In this document: one piece after another, positions 27,820 to 34,005 of the stretch
Numbering within the stretch: position 1 is the first letter of the stretch
Layout of the letters: each line of letters starts with the position of its first letter
Assembly (NCBI GenBank): GCA_965603825.1
Contig: CBFDEM010000058.1
Location: 744,001 to 808,000 of the forward strand
Reading direction: 5' to 3'
From: Blepharisma stoltei ATCC 30299
Lineage: Eukaryota > Protista > Ciliophora
DNA: 64,000 bases
Translations under genes and position numbers: made by a program
Notes under the pieces: model-generated
The model's input: the letters and a program-made list of their open reading frames with translations, nothing else
Told to the model about the DNA's origin: nothing
The model's database searches: none

Positions 27820-29322
27820 ATGAAAGAAATCGCTATAAGAACGCTTGAGTCTGTCAAGCACCTTTGTCCCTTCCTTTCTAGACATCAAACAATAACCCCA
27901 GCTCTGGTCACAGAAAACACTGAAAAGTGTCCTTTTATGAAATCTATGAACTTCGTTCAAAAGGGTGAAAAACCATCTATTGAAGACATTGCTGACAAGC
28001 TCATGGACCCTTTAAACTTCATTGACCTTGAAAGCATGAAGCCAAAACAAACCATAGGACTCGAAAGACATTTCCAAGAAGCCATTCAGAGGCTCAAAGA
28101 CGAAGGCCGATACAGGGTCTTTACCAAAGTCCTAAGAAATGCTGGGGATTTTCCTATGGCTACTGAATACATGACTGGTCAGGAAAAACAAATCACTATG
28201 TGGTGCTCAAATGACTATTTAGGCATGGGACAACATCCAAAGGTTATTAGAGCTATGACACAAGCTTTAAAACTTTATGGAGCGGGCTCTGGTGGGACTC
28301 GAAATATTGGAGGAAACACAAACCTGCATGTGAAACTGGAAAAAGAACTTGCAGACCTCCATGATAAAGAAGCTGCTTTAGTATGCACGTCAGGCTATGT
28401 GGCTAATGAAGCAGGTTTAAGTACTTTGCCATCATTATTTCCCCAAGGAGCGATCTTTTTTTCAGATGAGGAAAATCATGCGTCTATGATTTATGGCATG
28501 AGGTATTCGAAATTGAACAAAAAAGATATCAGGGTTTTTAGGCATAATGATATTAAGCAGCTAGAAGGGATGCTGGAAGCGTCGAATAATAATATTGATG
28601 AAAAAGATAAGGTGAAAATTATAGTTTTTGAAAGCGTCTATTCTATGAGTGGAAGTATTTCTCCTGTTGAACAAATAAAAGAAATCGCAGGGAAATACGG
28701 TGCTCTTACTTATATAGACGAAGTCCACGCAGTAGGGCTGTATGGAAATAGAGGAGGTGGGGTTACTCAAGAGAGAGGAGTTGATATTGACATTATTTCA
28801 GGGACTCTAGGCAAAGGATTTGGTACCCATGGTGGGTATTTAGCTTCTTCTTCATTGATTATTGACTGTATTAGAAGTTATGCGCCTTCGTTTATTTTTA
28901 CCACTTCTTTACCACCAGTTACATGTGCAGGAAGCATTGCGTCAATCCAGCATGTAAAAGAATCAAATACAGAAAGAAAATTACTTCATGAGCACTCAAA
29001 ATATATGAAAAGAAGGCTACAGGAAGAAAATCTTCCAGTTTTACCATCAGAAAGTCATATTGTACCTTTATTTATTGGAAACCCAAATGTCTGCAAAGAA
29101 GTAAGTGATCTTTTTTTCAATGAGTACCAAATTTATGTCCAGCCTATTAACTATCCAACTGTGCCAAGAGGACAAGAGCTTTTAAGGCTTTCGCCAGGCC
29201 CATTGCATACCCCTGATAAAATTGAGGATTTTATAGTGGCTGCCAAGAATATCTGGACCAGATTCTCCTTAGTAAACTATCAGCAGCTCCAAGATAGGCT
29301 CAAAGCTAAGCTTCATCAATAA
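27820..29322 (+). CDS. ALAS: 5-aminolevulinate synthase, mitochondrial
   Basis: [50 protein letters not shown]-lysine [20 protein letters not shown]-terminal CP motifs. Confidence 0.97.
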
Positions 29323-29369
29323 GATAAGAAAATTGGTCATATGACCACCTTAAAATCGTAAATTTTAAA

Positions 29370-30347
29370 ATGTCTTTAGAAGAAAAAATACGTGAAGTTC
29401 TAGCAAATTATTCATGCACATACTGCGGTCATTCATTAACTAGTAGCCAAAATAGAAGATCCTTAAGCCTGCAAGCCACGCCAACCGGAAAAGCTGAGCA
29501 AGGCGTACAAGTCGAGACCCCAATAATTAGGGGAAAATTAAAAAAAGAAACCTTGCTACAGAAAAAGGGAAAAGATTCTGTAAAAATTGAGCACCCACAA
29601 GGAGATTTAGACAACAAAACTGCAAGGTCTGCGACGGAATCTGCAATTGAGCCTAAAGTTCAATCAACAGCTTCACAGTCTTCGATTTCAGGAATCGTGA
29701 TCCCGATAAGTGTAGGAAATACAGTAATTTCGCATGGAAATACCCCAAGGAACTATAAGAATGCTTTAAAAAACAGCAAATGACTGATAAGTGCTAATAG
29801 CTCAGCTAATACATCAGAAAAAGTATTCATCGAAAAAGATGCTGCAAAGGATTCAAAAATGCCAGGAAAAAAGACATTAAGCTCTAAATCAAAATCTACA
29901 AATTACATAAAAACACCTATAAAACAGAGCTTGTGAAATTCTAAAAAAATTGTGATTTCCAAGTCAAATGCATCATCTCCAAGAGCGTCAAAAGAAGTTT
30001 TTAAAAATGAGAGGTCGCCCAAGTTTATCGATCTGAAAATTCAAGATTTATTTTCTGAAATTGATAAAACTGATGAAGAAAACAACTGAATCGACATTAT
30101 AGAAAACTCCAAGCCAAAAACATCGAAATCTCAAAAAATCGATATAAAGGCTGGGAATAGGGTCAAAAAAGAATTTTCTTATAAAACTAAACGAGAGCCG
30201 ATAGTAATAAAAGCACAAATATTAAAAGGGTCAAACCCCAGCTTTATCGTTACTTCACCTATTAACAATAGAGTGCCTCTAAAATCCAAGCCACAGAAGT
30301 TAGATTTGAGCAAGCCAACTTTAAATGATCTATTAGACCTTGTGTAA
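29370..30347 (+). CDS. Hypothetical S/K-rich protein (325 aa)
   Basis: ORF continues through three TGA codons to TAA 30345-30347. Confidence 0.65.
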
Positions 30348-30379
30348 TTTTCGAGTATTAAATTAATTATTATTCTTAT

Positions 30380-31900
30380 TTAAATGCCCTCTTCCTCCTC
30401 TTTATCTTTATCTTCTTCCTCTTCCTCTTCTTCTTCTTCCTCCTCTTTTTCTTCCACAACTTTTTCTTGCTTAGGAGGCTTTGCTTTCTTTACTTCAGCT
30501 TTTAACTGGTGTGTCACTATTTTAACTTCATCAAAGAACTCGTCTTCATCTGATTCTTCTTCTTCAGGTTCTTCATGTGCAGAATCTGACTCCAGTTCGG
30601 GCATTTCGTTGTTTTCTTCACTTTCAGAGTCTTCAAATTCGTCTTCTGAGTCTCTCTTCTTTTTCTTTGGCCTACCTCTAGTTCCAGGCACTTTCGGCTC
30701 TTTAGGTGGGGCGTCAGGATTTTTTGGTTTTCTGCCTCTTTTCTTTTTTTCTTTCTTTTCTTCTTCTCCAGCGATTTCTTCTGATTTTTCTGGTTTTTCT
30801 GGCTTGTCTGCGGCTTCTTTGACTTCTCCAGCTGCTTTAGGTTTTCTACCTCTTTTCTTTTTTTCTTCTTTGTGTTCTCCGTCTTCTTTTTTCTCTTCTT
30901 TAGTAACCTCAACAGATGTGGTTTCTTTGATTTCCGTTGTGACCACTTCTGTTCCGTCTGCTTTGACTTCTAAGGCTGCTTTAGCTTCTAAGGCTGCTTT
31001 GGCTTCTAAAGCTGCTTTTTCTTTTTTCGCCTTGGCTGCAGCTAGAGCTGGGTTTACTGGAGGCCCTGCAGACATATAGACTTCGACACTTTTTTCGAAC
31101 TGGACCCATAGCTTATTGAATTCTTCAGTATATATTTTGCATAAATCTGGATCATCAATAACAGTCAGATTTTCTTGATTTTTGTTGACAGCTTGCTTAG
31201 TCCAGTTAAAACTCCCAGTTAATAGCAAATAGTCATCAATTACCACGAATTTATTGTGCATGTGGGCGTGCGGATCTAAGTCGACTCTGACTGGGATTCC
31301 TTCATTATGGAAGTTCCAAATATCTGAGCCAAGCATTTTCATACATTCATCATCTGATATCACCCTCACATCTACTCCTCTTTTAACTGCATTTCGAATG
31401 GCGTCAGACAAACAATTGTTGGTTATTGTAAAAACACAAACAAGCATTGTCTTTTTGGCTCTATTCATATACACTACAAGCTTTCTTTCTGATTCGTCGC
31501 TTGGGAAGAAAAATGCGTCCTTAATGCGCTTGGATGGGGCAAGAGTCTCAGCAGTGATGGCCTGGATTGCTTGTTTTCCCCATTGGAGAGCCCCGGGATT
31601 TGACTCGAGGAGCTCAAAAACAAGTGAAATTAAGCTATTTATTTGAGGTCTTGGAATTTCGGAAGAGGCAAGGAGCGTGCGAAGTTCTGCAATGGAATCG
31701 GATTCACCAAGATGCTTTCTGAGAAAGTTTTCAACTTCATCATCGCTGTGAACTCCTTTTAAGGCATCCATCTTCACTTGCTGTCCTTCTACTTGCTGGT
31801 TGAACGTAAGTTTGACTGGCTTTTCTTTTGGCACTTTCTTTTTTGGCTCACCTTCAGCGGCATTTGGATCTGCTTTGCCGCGACCTCTACCTCTTTTCAT
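30380..31900 (-). CDS. PLD6/Zucchini/Nuc-like single-HKD phosphodiesterase with C-terminal AT-hook-like motifs and acidic tracts
   Basis: FFPS...AKKTMLVCVFTIT...RGVDVRVISD...MHNKFVVIDD..LLTGSFNWT.QA...NQEN. Tail has KKKRGRKPK twice, TRGRPKK and poly-E/D. Confidence 0.9.
   Translation of the reverse strand: MKRGRGRGKADPNAAEGEPKKKVPKEKPVKLTFNQQVEGQQVKMDALKGVHSDDEVENFLRKHLGESDSIAELRTLLASSEIPRPQINSLISLVFELLESNPGALQWGKQAIQAITAETLAPSKRIKDAFFFPSDESERKLVVYMNRAKKTMLVCVFTITNNCLSDAIRNAVKRGVDVRVISDDECMKMLGSDIWNFHNEGIPVRVDLDPHAHMHNKFVVIDDYLLLTGSFNWTKQAVNKNQENLTVIDDPDLCKIYTEEFNKLWVQFEKSVEVYMSAGPPVNPALAAAKAKKEKAALEAKAALEAKAALEVKADGTEVVTTEIKETTSVEVTKEEKKEDGEHKEEKKKRGRKPKAAGEVKEAADKPEKPEKSEEIAGEEEKKEKKKRGRKPKNPDAPPKEPKVPGTRGRPKKKKRDSEDEFEDSESEENNEMPELESDSAHEEPEEEESDEDEFFDEVKIVTHQLKAEVKKAKPPKQEKVVEEKEEEEEEEEEEEDKDKEEEEGI
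30965..31018 (-). repeat. 18-bp coding tandem repeat (KAALEA/V x3)
   Basis: Three near-identical units of gcttctaaggctgcttt on the + strand. Confidence 0.8.
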
Positions 31901-32375
31901 TTTTTATGGGCTCACATAAACTGTTGATTTTAACCATCACTATTCTGGTTGGTTTTAAGGGCTATTGACAATAACAAGCCTTCAAAGCCTTAAGTGGGGG
32001 TTATTGGGAAAGTGACGAAGATCGTATTAAAACTAGAGGTAATTTAGAAGAAAGATACGAGATTAATCAATAAAGACGAATGCGCATCGTGCCTGGGATC
32101 AAAAATAAGCTGAAAGGTTTTATCATGAATTGACATCTTAATGTATTATATCTGGATTGTCAATTATTGTTTCTGAATGCATTAAATATATCTTCAGAAT
32201 TTTAATAATTTGCTGTGGTGCTTATTTAACCCCTAAACCCTCATAATCCTACCTCTAGCAAGTCTGAATGAAAATTGGTTTACTTAATTAAGGCCAAAAC
32301 AATTGAAAAAATTATTAAATAATTATAAAAATTATTAAAACCTTGGTCTGATGCTTTTTTAGCAGTTTATCATTA

Positions 32376-32729
32376 TTATCTGATCCATCAAGCTCGACAA
32401 AAACCATTAAGAGAGCTTTGGTCTAACTTAGGCTTTTTGGTAGGCTTATTCGGGATTTCTGACTTTCTTTTCTGTGGCATTTTGCTTGGTAAACTTTCCA
32501 TAGACTTCCTAAGTTTAGTTTGCTTAAGCCCGTCCTTTCTAAACTCCTTTAGTTTCTCGTTGACTTCATTGATTTCTTTTAATGTTTTTTGAAGCAGCTC
32601 AAAGCTGGCGTCTGCGTATGGAGCTTCACATTTCGGTTTAGAAATGGCTGTTTGGCTTAATTTTGTGGGGTGTCTTATAATAGTTTTCCTGTCGCCGTTT
32701 AGTGTGCCATATACAGGGAAATTTAGCAT
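32376..32729 (-). CDS. Small hypothetical protein (117 aa)
   Basis: ORF reads through TGA 32388 to TAA 32376, ending ...GFCRAWWIR. Confidence 0.6.
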
Positions 32730-33081
32730 CTAATTATTATGATTTATATTTATCTAGTAAGTTTTAGACTAAAGAGATGCTTAATTTAGAGGTTTAGAGA
32801 GTAATTCTTGAAAATCGATGATAAAACTGAAATAATTTCTAAAAATAAGCTGTAAAAATTAAAAAATCTGCAATGATAAGCAAATAAAGCGGGAAAATCT
32901 TGAAACTTTGGGATGGCTCATTTTGGAATAAACAAATTATTCCTATATGATTATAAGCCCCTAAATGGTGTATTTATATAAATAAACAATCTGCCCTCAT
33001 AAAAATGATTTCAACAATTATCTCTCCAATTAAAATATTTTTATCAAAATTTTCTCCTAATAAGCATTATACATTTACTAA

Positions 33082-34005
33082 TTATTCAGAATCAGTGCAA
33101 ACCACAGGCAGCATCTGCAACAGATCATCCACTAATTCCATTACTTCTAATGACCTACGATTAATATCAATATTACTCAACATATCTACCAAATTTGAAT
33201 CCAAAATTTTCTTTAAATTCTGATCAATAACCATATCTTCTCCATCCTACATATCTCTTACCAGGACTAAATCTATAATATGTTCTAAAAGGATACACAA
33301 AATTTCATCAGAATCCCCATCTCTTTTCAGTAGCTGTATTAACTCTTTTTCGCCATTGTATTTTATAAATAAATTTTGGGCAATTTCACGGCTTCGGTAT
33401 AGCCTCGCACATATTGCTGCTGATAATAATCGGATTTGTCGAATGCTGTGTGATATCAAAGGAACTAGAATAGGAAAAATGTCCCTTTTTATGAGGTCAG
33501 TATATACTGTATCATTTTCTATTTCTAAGGAATGATATAAAAGTAATAAAGAATAGTCGCGCAAATCTTCACTATTCGAACTAATAAATTCTACAATAAA
33601 TTTTAATATTTCCGGCAAAATTTGTTGAATTGCAGAGGCAGATTCGCATGCAGCTTCTGCTAGATATGCCAAAGCTAAGCAGCCAATACTTTCTGGCTTA
33701 TGGGCCCAACCGTTAATTTTGCTATTTCTGATATCACAGGCAGAACTGATTTTTCCTAAAAATTTGGCAATTTCACTCCAGTTCTTTTCTTCCCTGAAAT
33801 TTATGAGTTCTATTATTAACGGTTCGTCTTTTATATAAGAGAGGTCAAGGTTTGTGTTATTGTCTTCTTCAGTGGTGACAGCATGAACGTAAAACTCTTG
33901 CAAAAGCACAGGATTTGTATTTGCAGTTCGTCTGGGTAGTCTAAATCTCATCATAGTTGTAGCCTTTTCTGAATTAAGATAAGATCTGCTTTCACAGCAT
34001 CCCAT
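33082..34005 (-). CDS. ARM/HEAT-like protein with N-terminal dual acylation motif (MGCC); 2 exons
   Basis: Intron 33247-33261 removes TAG and adds a 54-codon last exon. Helical repeats are Leu/Ile-rich. Confidence 0.75.
33247..33261 (-). other. 15-nt intron GTAAGAGATATGTAG
   Basis: GT-AG, A at position 10, in-frame stop removed. Confidence 0.85.

What the first reader, a model, noticed from the sequence alone, without database searches (positions are those of the whole stretch)
30380..31900. Zucchini/PLD6-type HKD nuclease fused to AT-hook-like motifs and acidic tracts: candidate chromatin-targeted nuclease
Seen: an intact single HxK(x4)D...GSxN...NxEN catalytic set, an N-terminal basic MKRGRGRGK and PKKKVPK instead of a hydrophobic anchor, and a tail with RGRPKK plus two KKKRGRKPK motifs interleaved with long E/D runs. 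Known: animal PLD6/Zucchini is tethered to mitochondria by an N-terminal transmembrane helix and cuts single-stranded nucleic acid in piRNA biogenesis. Bacterial Nuc is a nuclease of the same fold. AT-hooks (RGRP) bind AT-rich minor grooves, and acidic tracts often bind histones. Inference: this may be a nuclear nuclease steered to AT-rich DNA or chromatin. In a ciliate this would fit degradation of eliminated germline DNA or the old macronucleus, or small-RNA processing. I do not recognise this architecture as described.
Basis: partly seen in the sequence, partly recalled or inferred. Interest (0 to 1): 0.8.

Follow-up and report, generated by a model that had tools for sequence, protein, structure and literature searches.

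The report
Soluble Zucchini-like nuclease with AT-hook tail
A gene of the ciliate Blepharisma stoltei encodes an intact, anchor-less relative of the animal piRNA nuclease Zucchini/PLD6 that has gained a DNA-hook-plus-acidic tail, so it is a plausible but untested nuclear nuclease.

Summary
Window 30380-31900 (minus strand) is an intact, transcribed 506-aa gene of Blepharisma stoltei.

What the protein contains:
- One complete HKD catalytic set: H215, K217, D222, GSxN, NQEN.
- A basic N-terminus with no hydrophobic anchor.
- A disordered tail with three RGR(K)P hook motifs, one of them canonical (RGRPKKKK), followed by two acidic tracts.

Closest solved relatives are mammalian PLD6 and fly Zucchini, then bacterial Nuc and NucT.

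- The anchor-less form is the rule. The core of a four-helix N-domain plus one HKD domain recurs in Tetrahymena, Stylonychia and Stentor, in three further B. stoltei paralogs, and in roughly 230-aa bacterial proteins.
- The family also lacks the roughly 30-residue insert of mammalian PLD6.
- Only the hook/acidic tail is special. It is confined to a small Blepharisma clade. The scan separately flagged the paralog (s1-657773).
- A homodimer with a composite active site is predicted (0.74 against 0.00 for controls).

Nuclear or chromatin targeting is inferred from motifs only. Any role in DNA elimination or small-RNA processing is untested, because developmental expression could not be obtained here. 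I found no paper on ciliate PLD6-like proteins.

Verdict: a new variant of a known kind, of moderate interest.

The parts
30380..31900 (-). Complete CDS, 506 codons plus a TAA stop, of a PLD6/Zucchini-like HKD protein of Blepharisma stoltei. It has no intron.
   Evidence: ORF list and translation. The identical 506-aa product is annotated in GCA_914767885.1. RNA-like contigs are colinear over 30458-31883/31921 with 0 gaps, and depth is zero in the intergenic stretch from about 32040 to 32313; beyond the start codon only one X2 contig reaches 31921.
31772..31900 (-). Basic N-terminal arm, residues 1-43, net charge +7. It holds MKRGRGRGK and the NLS-like PKKKVPK, and has no hydrophobic segment.
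   Evidence: The start M[KP]RG[KR] is shared across the heterotrich clade.
31541..31744 (-). Four-helix N-domain, residues 53-120. It is conserved in ciliate and bacterial homologs and has no Pfam family. Helices 3 and 4 lie in the predicted dimer interface.
   Evidence: AF2 models with pLDDT 90.7 and 80.4. Alignment with bacterial and IQ-clade proteins. No Pfam hit. Best structural match Z 7.8, which is not significant for a helical domain. Interface residues 45-81 of the model.
31085..31525 (-). HKD (PLDc_2) alpha/beta catalytic domain, residues 126-272.
   Evidence: Pfam E 1.5e-29. PDB sequence hits to PLD6 at E 7e-26 and Nuc at 3.6e-14. Foldseek hits to mouse Zucchini 4ggj at E 2e-14 and Nuc 1byr at 1e-11.
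31235..31258 (-). Catalytic motif H215-N-K217-F-V-V-I-D222 (HxKxxxxD).
   Evidence: Invariant in alignments A1, A2 and A3.
31205..31216 (-). G229-S230-F-N232 (GSxN) motif.
   Evidence: Invariant. It lies in the predicted dimer interface.
31169..31180 (-). N241-Q-E243-N244 motif.
   Evidence: N241 and N244 are invariant in all three alignments; E243 is invariant in A1 and A3 and nearly so in A2. It contacts H/K residues of the other subunit in the predicted dimer.
30958..31018 (-). 18-nt tandem repeat, 3.4 copies, encoding (EAKAAL)n. It is a short Ala/Lys/Glu helical linker between the core and the tail.
   Evidence: Tandem Repeats Finder score 101; translation.
30836..30862 (-). Hook-like motif 1, KKKRGRKPK (residues 347-355). 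It is non-canonical (RGRKP).
   Evidence: It aligns by eye and by short BLAST segments with K-P-R-K-G-R-P-P-K-A-A of paralog P0008.
30722..30748 (-). Hook-like motif 2, KKKRGRKPK (residues 385-393). It is an internal duplicate of motif 1.
   Evidence: 33 of 42 nt identical to unit 1.
30653..30679 (-). Canonical AT-hook core with basic flank, RGRPKKKKR (residues 408-416).
   Evidence: Translation. RGRP[KR][KR] arose in 2e-5 of tail shuffles. An allelic variant at codon 410 is synonymous.
30524..30646 (-). Acidic tract 1, residues 419-459, net charge -24, with S-x-x-D/E (CK2-type) sites. It ends in SDEDEFFDE, which resembles the C-terminal SDSDFE / DSEFE of the Blepharisma-clade paralogs.
30383..30523 (-). 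Basic spacer (residues 460-481, net +5) followed by a poly-Glu terminal tract (residues 482-506, net -16). This extension is absent from the paralogs.

Best explanation
The gene encodes a soluble, single-HKD phosphodiesterase of the Nuc/Zucchini (PLD6) nuclease branch.

How it most likely works:
- Two chains pair so that H215/K217/D222, GSxN and NQEN from both subunits build one active site. This is the arrangement seen in Nuc and Zucchini.
- Helices 3 and 4 of a conserved four-helix N-domain extend that interface.
- The folded core is net acidic. Affinity for nucleic acid is therefore probably supplied by the basic N-terminal arm and by an HMGA-like tail: three RGR(K)P hooks followed by acidic, CK2-site-rich tracts.
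- Those appendages would also carry the enzyme into the nucleus and hold it on AT-rich macronuclear or micronuclear DNA or chromatin, where it cuts DNA or nascent RNA.

Shown here: the fold, the catalytic residues, the absence of an anchor, transcription, the non-random hooks, and the restriction of the tail to one lineage.

Inferred: the substrate, the nuclear address, and what the acidic tracts do (histone binding or self-inhibition).
For: - PLDc_2 scores E 1.5e-29.
- Nearest solved proteins by sequence are PLD6 (E 7e-26, or 2.6e-47 with a profile), Zucchini, Nuc and NucT.
- The structural search gives the same order: 4ggj at E 2e-14, with TM 0.78 normalised to the target.
- The only NCBIfam neighbours are nucleases (NucT, DrmC, DpdK), all below their cut-offs.
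- The catalytic columns are invariant in 17-32 homologs.
- Homodimer ipSAE is 0.74 against a best control of 0.00. The mark was reached by 21 of 30 proteins solved as pairs of one chain and by 0 of 23 solved as single chains. Runs agree in at least 96% of contacts and pLDDT is 81. The interface runs through the catalytic motifs.
- Natural tandem fusions of two whole modules exist in Stentor-like relatives P0001-P0006, as expected if a dimer is required.
- There is no TM helix.
- The hooks are non-random.
- Six of seven allelic differences are synonymous, including three in the tail.
- The gene is transcribed in four runs.
Against: - No localisation, activity or binding data exist for any member of the family.
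- Two of the three hooks deviate from the GRP core, and Pfam AT_hook is not reported.
- The tail is not significantly similar even to that of its closest paralog (E above 1). It is evolving fast and may be only loosely constrained.
- K/E/D-rich tails with CK2 sites are as typical of nucleolar RNA-processing proteins as of chromatin proteins.
- The dimer score may partly reflect the predictor's memory of solved Nuc and Zucchini dimers (caveat given).
Confidence: 0.5

Rival explanations
1. It is a nucleolar or nucleoplasmic RNA nuclease. The RG-rich N-terminus and the hook-like motifs bind RNA, as extended AT-hooks and RGG motifs can. The K/E/D-rich, CK2-site tail is a nucleolar-type low-complexity region. 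The enzyme would trim or degrade RNA, such as pre-rRNA spacers or non-coding transcripts, rather than act on chromatin DNA.
For: Its closest characterised relative, Zucchini/PLD6, is a single-strand-specific endoribonuclease (established knowledge). The N-terminus reads KRGRGRGK. Two hooks are non-canonical. The tail composition resembles that of nucleolar proteins. The gene is present in all four RNA-like runs, which fits a housekeeping role but cannot be quantified.
Against: One hook is a textbook RGRPKK minor-groove motif followed by an acidic tail, as in HMGA proteins. No RNA-binding domain is detected. Nothing here separates an RNA substrate from a DNA substrate.
Confidence: 0.2
2. It is a development-specific genome-editing factor, a special case of the nuclear-nuclease reading. 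It would act during conjugation to make or trim Piwi-bound small RNAs, or to degrade excised IES DNA or the old macronucleus.
For: Homology to the piRNA nuclease. Ciliates use Piwi-bound small RNAs and mass DNA elimination, as described in PMC9942806 and PMC9942856. The family is expanded to four paralogs in B. stoltei.
Against: There is no expression time course. No string starting with PLD occurs in the main text or the SI appendix of the Blepharisma MAC genome paper, which discusses strongly upregulated development genes. That is weak evidence, because the tables themselves were not readable. The same core family also exists in bacteria, which have no such process.
Confidence: 0.1
3. It is a lipid phosphodiesterase, as its automatic database name 'Mitochondrial cardiolipin hydrolase' says. 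It would produce phosphatidic acid on a membrane.
For: UniRef names for the paralogs. MitoPLD was originally described as a cardiolipin hydrolase (established literature).
Against: There is no transmembrane or amphipathic anchor and no mitochondrial presequence, since acidic residues lie within the first 20 aa. The bacterial neighbours are all nucleases. Highly charged nucleic-acid-type appendages are present.
Confidence: 0.07
4. It is a catalytically idle scaffold, comparable to the FAM83 pseudo-PLD domains.
For: Weak Pfam SACK1/FAM83 similarity at E 0.44, and FAM83 structures appear among the fold hits.
Against: Every catalytic residue is present and invariant across the family, whereas FAM83 proteins lack them.
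Confidence: 0.03

Closest known systems
Animal PLD6 / MitoPLD / Zucchini (PDB 4ggj, 9lkx, 4gel)
   Same: Both are single-HKD domains of the same fold with an identical catalytic set. Both share the FFPS strand before helix 1. PLD6 gives the best sequence score (E 7e-26, or 2.6e-47 with a profile) and the best structural score. Both are expected to act as homodimers.
   Different: This protein has no N-terminal transmembrane anchor. It lacks the roughly 30-residue insert that mammalian PLD6 carries between FFPS and helix 1; from memory of the 2012 structure papers, that insert holds the zinc-binding residues. Instead it has a four-helix N-domain, a basic N-arm and an AT-hook/acidic tail.
Bacterial Nuc (1byr) and NucT (6ehi)
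   Same: They share the minimal single-HKD nuclease fold and dimeric logic (Nuc E 3.6e-14 by sequence, 1e-11 by Foldseek). The insert seen in animal PLD6 is not evident in their alignments either.
   Different: Nuc and NucT are exported proteins without the four-helix N-domain. NCBIfam NucT models score far below their cut-offs, at most 56.8 bits against cut-offs of 211-351.
Uncharacterised bacterial 'phospholipase D-like domain-containing' proteins of about 225-235 aa (for example the Planctomycetota MAG protein P0155 and an ESM Atlas cluster of 294 members)
   Same: They have the same two-part core, the four-helix N-domain plus the HKD domain, and are alignable end to end. Atlas TM is 0.68/0.73 over residues 14-230.
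   Different: They have no basic arm, no hooks and no acidic tail. Their function is equally unknown.
HMGA-type AT-hook proteins
   Same: Both have several R-G-R-P-type hooks in a disordered basic region, followed by an acidic C-terminal tail rich in CK2 sites.
   Different: Only one of the three hooks here has the canonical GRP core. There is no Pfam AT_hook hit. In this protein the hooks are an appendage to an enzyme rather than the whole protein.

Membership tests
PLD superfamily, PLDc_2 (PF13091) | Match to the family HMM above the gathering score | tested here: met
   102.9 bits against a cut-off of 27, E 1.5e-29, residues 144-265.
PLD superfamily, PLDc_2 (PF13091) | HxK(x)4D plus the downstream GSxN catalytic motif | tested here: met
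   H215, K217, D222, G229, S230 and N232 are invariant in alignments A1-A3.
Single-HKD nucleases (Nuc/Zucchini type) | A homodimer forms one composite active site | tested here: met
   This is a prediction only. ipSAE is 0.74 against a best control of 0.00. The mark was reached by 21 of 30 proteins solved as pairs of one chain and by 0 of 23 solved as single chains. Contacts agree at 96% or more and pLDDT is 81. The interface runs through the HKD, GSxN and NQEN residues. The score may partly come from the predictor's memory of solved dimers.
Single-HKD nucleases (Nuc/Zucchini type) | Phosphodiesterase activity on nucleic acid | not testable with these tools
   This needs recombinant protein with and without H215N, assayed on ssRNA, ssDNA and dsDNA.
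PLD6 / Zucchini | PLD6 is the closest relative by sequence and structure | tested here: met
   PLD6 ranks above Nuc and NucT in phmmer, profile and Foldseek searches. No rooted tree including animal sequences was made.
PLD6 / Zucchini | N-terminal transmembrane or mitochondrial outer-membrane anchor | tested here: not met
   The highest 19-residue hydropathy is 1.12 and lies in the core. Residues 1-40 average -1.56 and are basic.
PLD6 / Zucchini | Insert between strand 1 (FFPS) and helix 1, which carries the zinc-binding residues | tested here: not met
   The profile aligns the mammalian FFPS at chain positions 4-13 or 9-18, and the domain resumes at positions 43-44. That is an insert of about 30 residues which this family lacks. 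In the protein there is no Cys or His between F131 and C154. That the insert binds zinc is recalled from the literature and was not tested here.
PLD6 / Zucchini | Role in Piwi-bound small-RNA biogenesis | not testable with these tools
   No expression time course or genetic data could be reached.
Bacterial NucT (NCBIfam NF010490-NF010493) | Score above the equivalog cut-off | tested here: not met
   The best score is 56.8 bits, against cut-offs of 211-351.
AT-hook (HMGA-like) | R-G-R-P core flanked by Lys/Arg | tested here: met
   One canonical copy, T-RGRP-KKKKR at residues 407-416. Two variants, KKK-RGRKP-K at 347-355 and 385-393. All are non-random against shuffles.
AT-hook (HMGA-like) | Match to Pfam AT_hook (PF02178) | tested here: inconclusive
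   No hit was listed at E up to 5 for the tail. However, the model is 13 residues long and HMMER's filters drop weak matches.
AT-hook (HMGA-like) | Binding to the minor groove of AT-rich DNA | not testable with these tools
   This needs an EMSA or footprinting with the tail peptide.

The most novel reading that the evidence does not exclude
Ciliates carry a soluble, ancestral-type Zucchini nuclease family. In Blepharisma one branch has been tethered to chromatin by AT-hooks to act in the nucleus during sexual development. It would either cut long non-coding transcripts into Piwi-loaded small RNAs, or destroy excised germline DNA or the old macronucleus. That would be a Zucchini-like step in a non-animal Piwi pathway.
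Probability: 0.1. Interest if true: 0.85.

Novelty: new variant of a known kind. Interest (0 to 1): 0.42.

Why it matters
Zucchini/PLD6 is known as an animal nuclease anchored to mitochondria that makes piRNAs. This work shows three things.

- An anchor-less relative with a conserved four-helix N-domain is standard equipment of ciliates: Blepharisma (four paralogs), Stentor, Tetrahymena and Stylonychia. Bacteria have it too.
- No member appears to have been studied.
- One Blepharisma branch has added a chromatin-type address.

Ciliates rely on Piwi-bound small RNAs and on large-scale DNA destruction, so these genes are cheap, well-defined candidates for knockdown and localisation. If they turn out to be ordinary housekeeping nucleases, the result still corrects the misleading automatic name 'mitochondrial cardiolipin hydrolase'.

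Tried and rejected
- **Hidden introns.** I looked for the 15-16-nt heterotrich introns that could hide in frame. RNA-like contigs are colinear over 30458-31883 with no gap, so the CDS is unspliced there.
- **N-domain identity.** There is no Pfam hit. The best VIA-align Z is 7.8 (MIF4G, MA3 and CID-like helical hairpins). That is below the level that means anything for helical bundles, so no homology is claimed.
- **TrmBL2 (5box).** It covered 268 columns in Foldseek but at rmsd 20. It shares only the PLD-like half and was rejected as a whole-protein match.
- **Tail homology.** BLAST of the tail against the tail of paralog P0008 gives E above 1. Only short motifs match. The Atlas feature search of the tail returned no usable hit.
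- **Developmental expression.** The MAC genome paper and its SI text hold no string starting with PLD, and Data S3 is not held. The four runs are Logan contigs with no time-point labels, and contig depth cannot rank expression.
- **Literature.** Five searches found no paper on a ciliate or protist PLD6/Zucchini homolog, or on the accession numbers of the Tetrahymena, Stentor and Blepharisma proteins.
- **Not run.** The word-based searches already gave 30 and 630 relatives. No animal PLD6 sequence was available as a reference, so the tree is unrooted with respect to animals, and I make no claim about which state is ancestral.
- **Antisense ORF.** ORF 30384-31079 (+, 231 aa) is a by-product of the GAA/AAG-rich coding strand and was dismissed.
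Full report
**Observation**

The stretch 30380-31900 holds one open reading frame on the minus strand, from ATG to TAA, 506 codons long and without an internal stop.
- MKRGRGRGK at residues 1-9 and PKKKVPK at 19-25.
- H215-x-K217-x4-D222, G229-S230-x-N232 and N241-Q-E243-N244.
- KKKRGRKPK at 347-355 and again at 385-393, and RGRPKKKKR at 408-416.
- Two acidic tracts, residues 419-459 (net -24) and 482-506 (net -16).

The acidic tracts follow the hook region rather than alternating with it. That is the only correction to the description.

**Source and reality of the gene**

The identical 506-aa product is annotated on contig CAJZBQ010000058.1 of Blepharisma stoltei assembly GCA_914767885.1.

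Four runs of one 2022 study behave like RNA assemblies. Their contigs cover gene bodies. Depth is zero in the intergenic stretch from about 32040 to 32313, and beyond the start codon only one X2 contig runs on, to 31921. They cover 30458-31883/31921 colinearly with no gaps. The gene is therefore transcribed and, over that span, unspliced. The candidate 15-16-nt introns found by pattern are not used.

A second haplotype in two runs differs at seven sites. Six are synonymous and one is D252E. Three of the synonymous sites lie in the tail, one of them inside the RGRP codons. This is a small sample, but it is what purifying selection would give.

**The catalytic core**

- Pfam PLDc_2 matches at E 1.5e-29.
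- The best solved relatives by sequence are human and mouse PLD6 (E about 1e-25), fly Zucchini, then Salmonella Nuc (3.6e-14) and Helicobacter NucT.
- A family profile sharpens the order: PLD6 at 2.6e-47, Nuc at 6e-25, NucT at 4.7e-18.
- An AlphaFold model of residues 40-285 is confident (mean pLDDT 90.7). Foldseek returns the same list, with mouse Zucchini 4ggj first at E 2e-14.
- The only NCBIfam neighbours are nucleases (NucT, DISARM DrmC, DpdK). All are far below their cut-offs.
- The catalytic residues are invariant in alignments of 17, 32 and 20 homologs; E243 alone is only nearly invariant in the 32-sequence alignment.

A single HKD chain supplies only half an active site. A two-copy prediction scored ipSAE 0.74 against a best control of 0.00. 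That mark was reached by 21 of 30 proteins solved as pairs of one chain and by 0 of 23 solved as single chains. The three runs agreed in at least 96% of contacts, and pLDDT was 81. The interface runs through H213-F218, T228-N232 and N241-N244, and also through helices 3 and 4 of the N-domain. The tool warns that a pass in a family with solved dimers may reflect memory.

There is independent natural support. Stentor-like relatives P0001-P0006 carry two complete modules in one chain, and each half groups with the same half of the other tandem proteins in the tree.

**What differs from animal PLD6**

1. There is no anchor. The highest 19-residue hydropathy is 1.12, inside the core, and the first 40 residues are basic and hydrophilic.
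2. The profile aligns the mammalian FFPS strand at chain positions 4-13 or 9-18, but the domain resumes only at positions 43-44. Mammalian PLD6 therefore has an insert of about 30 residues that this family lacks. From memory of the 2012 structure papers, that insert carries the zinc-binding residues. This protein has no Cys or His between F131 and C154.
3. Residues 53-120 form a confident four-helix domain. It has no Pfam family and no significant structural match (best Z 7.8).

**The family**

This is what changes the reading. A search with the domain alone returned 630 relatives. The same layout, a four-helix N-domain plus one HKD domain, is found in:
- Tetrahymena thermophila (XP_001028688, 264 aa);
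- Stylonychia lemnae (274 aa);
- Stentor coeruleus (291 aa);
- three more B. stoltei paralogs;
- bacterial proteins of about 225-235 aa, for example a Planctomycetota MAG protein. These align end to end, and the ESM Atlas has a matching 294-member bacterial cluster.

Of 162 collected homologs, only one has a convincing N-terminal hydrophobic segment. The soluble form is therefore the norm, and the lack of an anchor is no special mark of this protein. UniRef calls the named ciliate proteins 'Mitochondrial cardiolipin hydrolase' by transfer.

A maximum-likelihood tree (quick search, SH-aLRT support) gives four groups. There is a heterotrich clade (support 99), in which most members start M[KP]RG[KR]. 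A second clade's examined members, including the fourth B. stoltei paralog, end in an IQ motif. There is a bacterial clade, and a looser group holds Tetrahymena and Stylonychia.

The window protein is sister to P0009 plus the P0007/P0008 pair (support 96). P0007 is probably B. japonicum; P0008 is a B. stoltei paralog.

**The tail**

Only that small Blepharisma clade has a long K/E-rich tail. Hook motifs occur only in the window protein and in P0007/P0008 (KPRKGRPPKAA) among the 162 homologs.

In the window protein the hooks are not a side-effect of composition:
- Three matches to [KR]G[KR][KR]?P were seen, against about 1e-5 of 100,000 shuffles.
- The canonical RGRP[KR][KR] arose in 2e-5 of shuffles.
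- Six of the tail's seven arginines sit in the three RGR motifs.
- Two hooks are one internal duplication (33 of 42 nt identical).

Only one hook has the canonical GRP core. Pfam lists no AT_hook hit. The tails of the two paralogs are not significantly alike by BLAST.

Three hooks followed by an acidic tail rich in CK2 sites is the HMGA layout. The same composition is also common in nucleolar proteins.

Other members of the family carry acidic or basic low-complexity extensions at the N-terminus instead (P0021, P0022, P0027). Charged appendages have therefore been added more than once.

**Mechanism**

I read the protein as a homodimeric Nuc/Zucchini-type phosphodiesterase. Its folded core is net acidic (-8 over residues 44-272). 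It would depend on the basic N-arm (+7) and the hook segment (+11) for nucleic-acid affinity and for a nuclear address. The acidic tracts would either bind histones or fold back on the basic parts.

The fold, the active site, the absence of an anchor, the dimer prediction, transcription and the hooks are shown. The substrate, the compartment and the biological process are inferred.

The rival I rate highest is an RNA-directed nucleolar or nucleoplasmic role. I could not get time-resolved expression, and no string starting with PLD occurs in the Blepharisma genome papers or in the one SI file held. The presence of the same core in bacteria shows that the core itself is not tied to ciliate genome editing.

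**Novelty**

I found no paper on any ciliate or protist PLD6-like protein. The core is a known fold in an unstudied soluble sub-family. The hook and acidic appendage is a lineage-restricted variant.

The scan's first stage also flagged the paralog on another contig (s1-657773). My alignment confirms that it has no anchor and carries a KGRPPK motif.

I rate this a new variant of a known kind with moderate interest. It is a good, cheap candidate for localisation and knockdown, not yet a discovery.

**Limits**

- No animal PLD6 sequence was available by reference, so the tree is not rooted against animals.

Noticed in passing
L001 (GCA_914767885.1, CAJZBQ010000058.1) against window 28499-33765; insert points at window ~31640-31649, ~31361-31368, ~31128-31134 and ~30471-30473: The public record that carries this gene is the hybrid MAC+IES assembly. 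Compared with the window, it has 12 extra segments in about 8 kb. Four of them (about 298, 172, 84 and 82 bp) interrupt this CDS, so the germline copy of the gene is split by four IESs. The sizes fit the published 72-110 bp periodic classes and the roughly 174 bp class. An insert of about 399 bp just upstream of the ATG fits the roughly 389 bp MITE-like class (PMC9942856).
   Followed up: partly
L004 = G000:C54:244326-248000 (paralog P0012): The six-frame match to this paralog contains three in-frame TGA codons, yet the annotated 363-aa protein is intact. This is consistent with UGA read as Trp in Blepharisma. The window gene itself uses no in-frame TGA.
   Followed up: partly
window 30641, 30671, 30692, 31076, 31103, 31121, 31145: Two of the four RNA-like runs carry a second haplotype of the gene with seven differences. 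Six are synonymous and one is D252E. The other two runs show only the window's allele. This may reflect the two mating-type strains mixed in the study.
   Followed up: partly
P0001-P0006 (540-568 aa, environmental and Logan contigs, sister to Stentor P0013): These are tandem fusions of two complete modules (N-domain plus HKD) in one chain. Each half clusters with the same half of the other tandem proteins, which points to one old duplication. They would form an intramolecular pseudo-dimer like PLD3/4.
   Followed up: partly
P0061 (4th B. stoltei paralog, G000:C57:451307-451837), P0053, P0066, P0086: A separate ciliate clade of the same family ends in an IQ calmodulin-binding motif (Pfam IQ, E 5.9e-05 in P0061). 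This hints at calcium/calmodulin control of an HKD nuclease.
   Followed up: no
window 30384-31079 (+): A 231-aa antisense ORF lies over the tail-coding region. It is a by-product of the purine-rich (GAA/AAG) coding strand and is not a gene.
   Followed up: yes
window 29370-30345 (+): The neighbouring gene appears to continue past the table-11 stop at 29781-29783. An in-frame TGA lies at 29934-29936, and the frame may run to a TAA near 30346. This is probably another UGA=Trp case that the mechanical ORF list cuts short.
   Followed up: no
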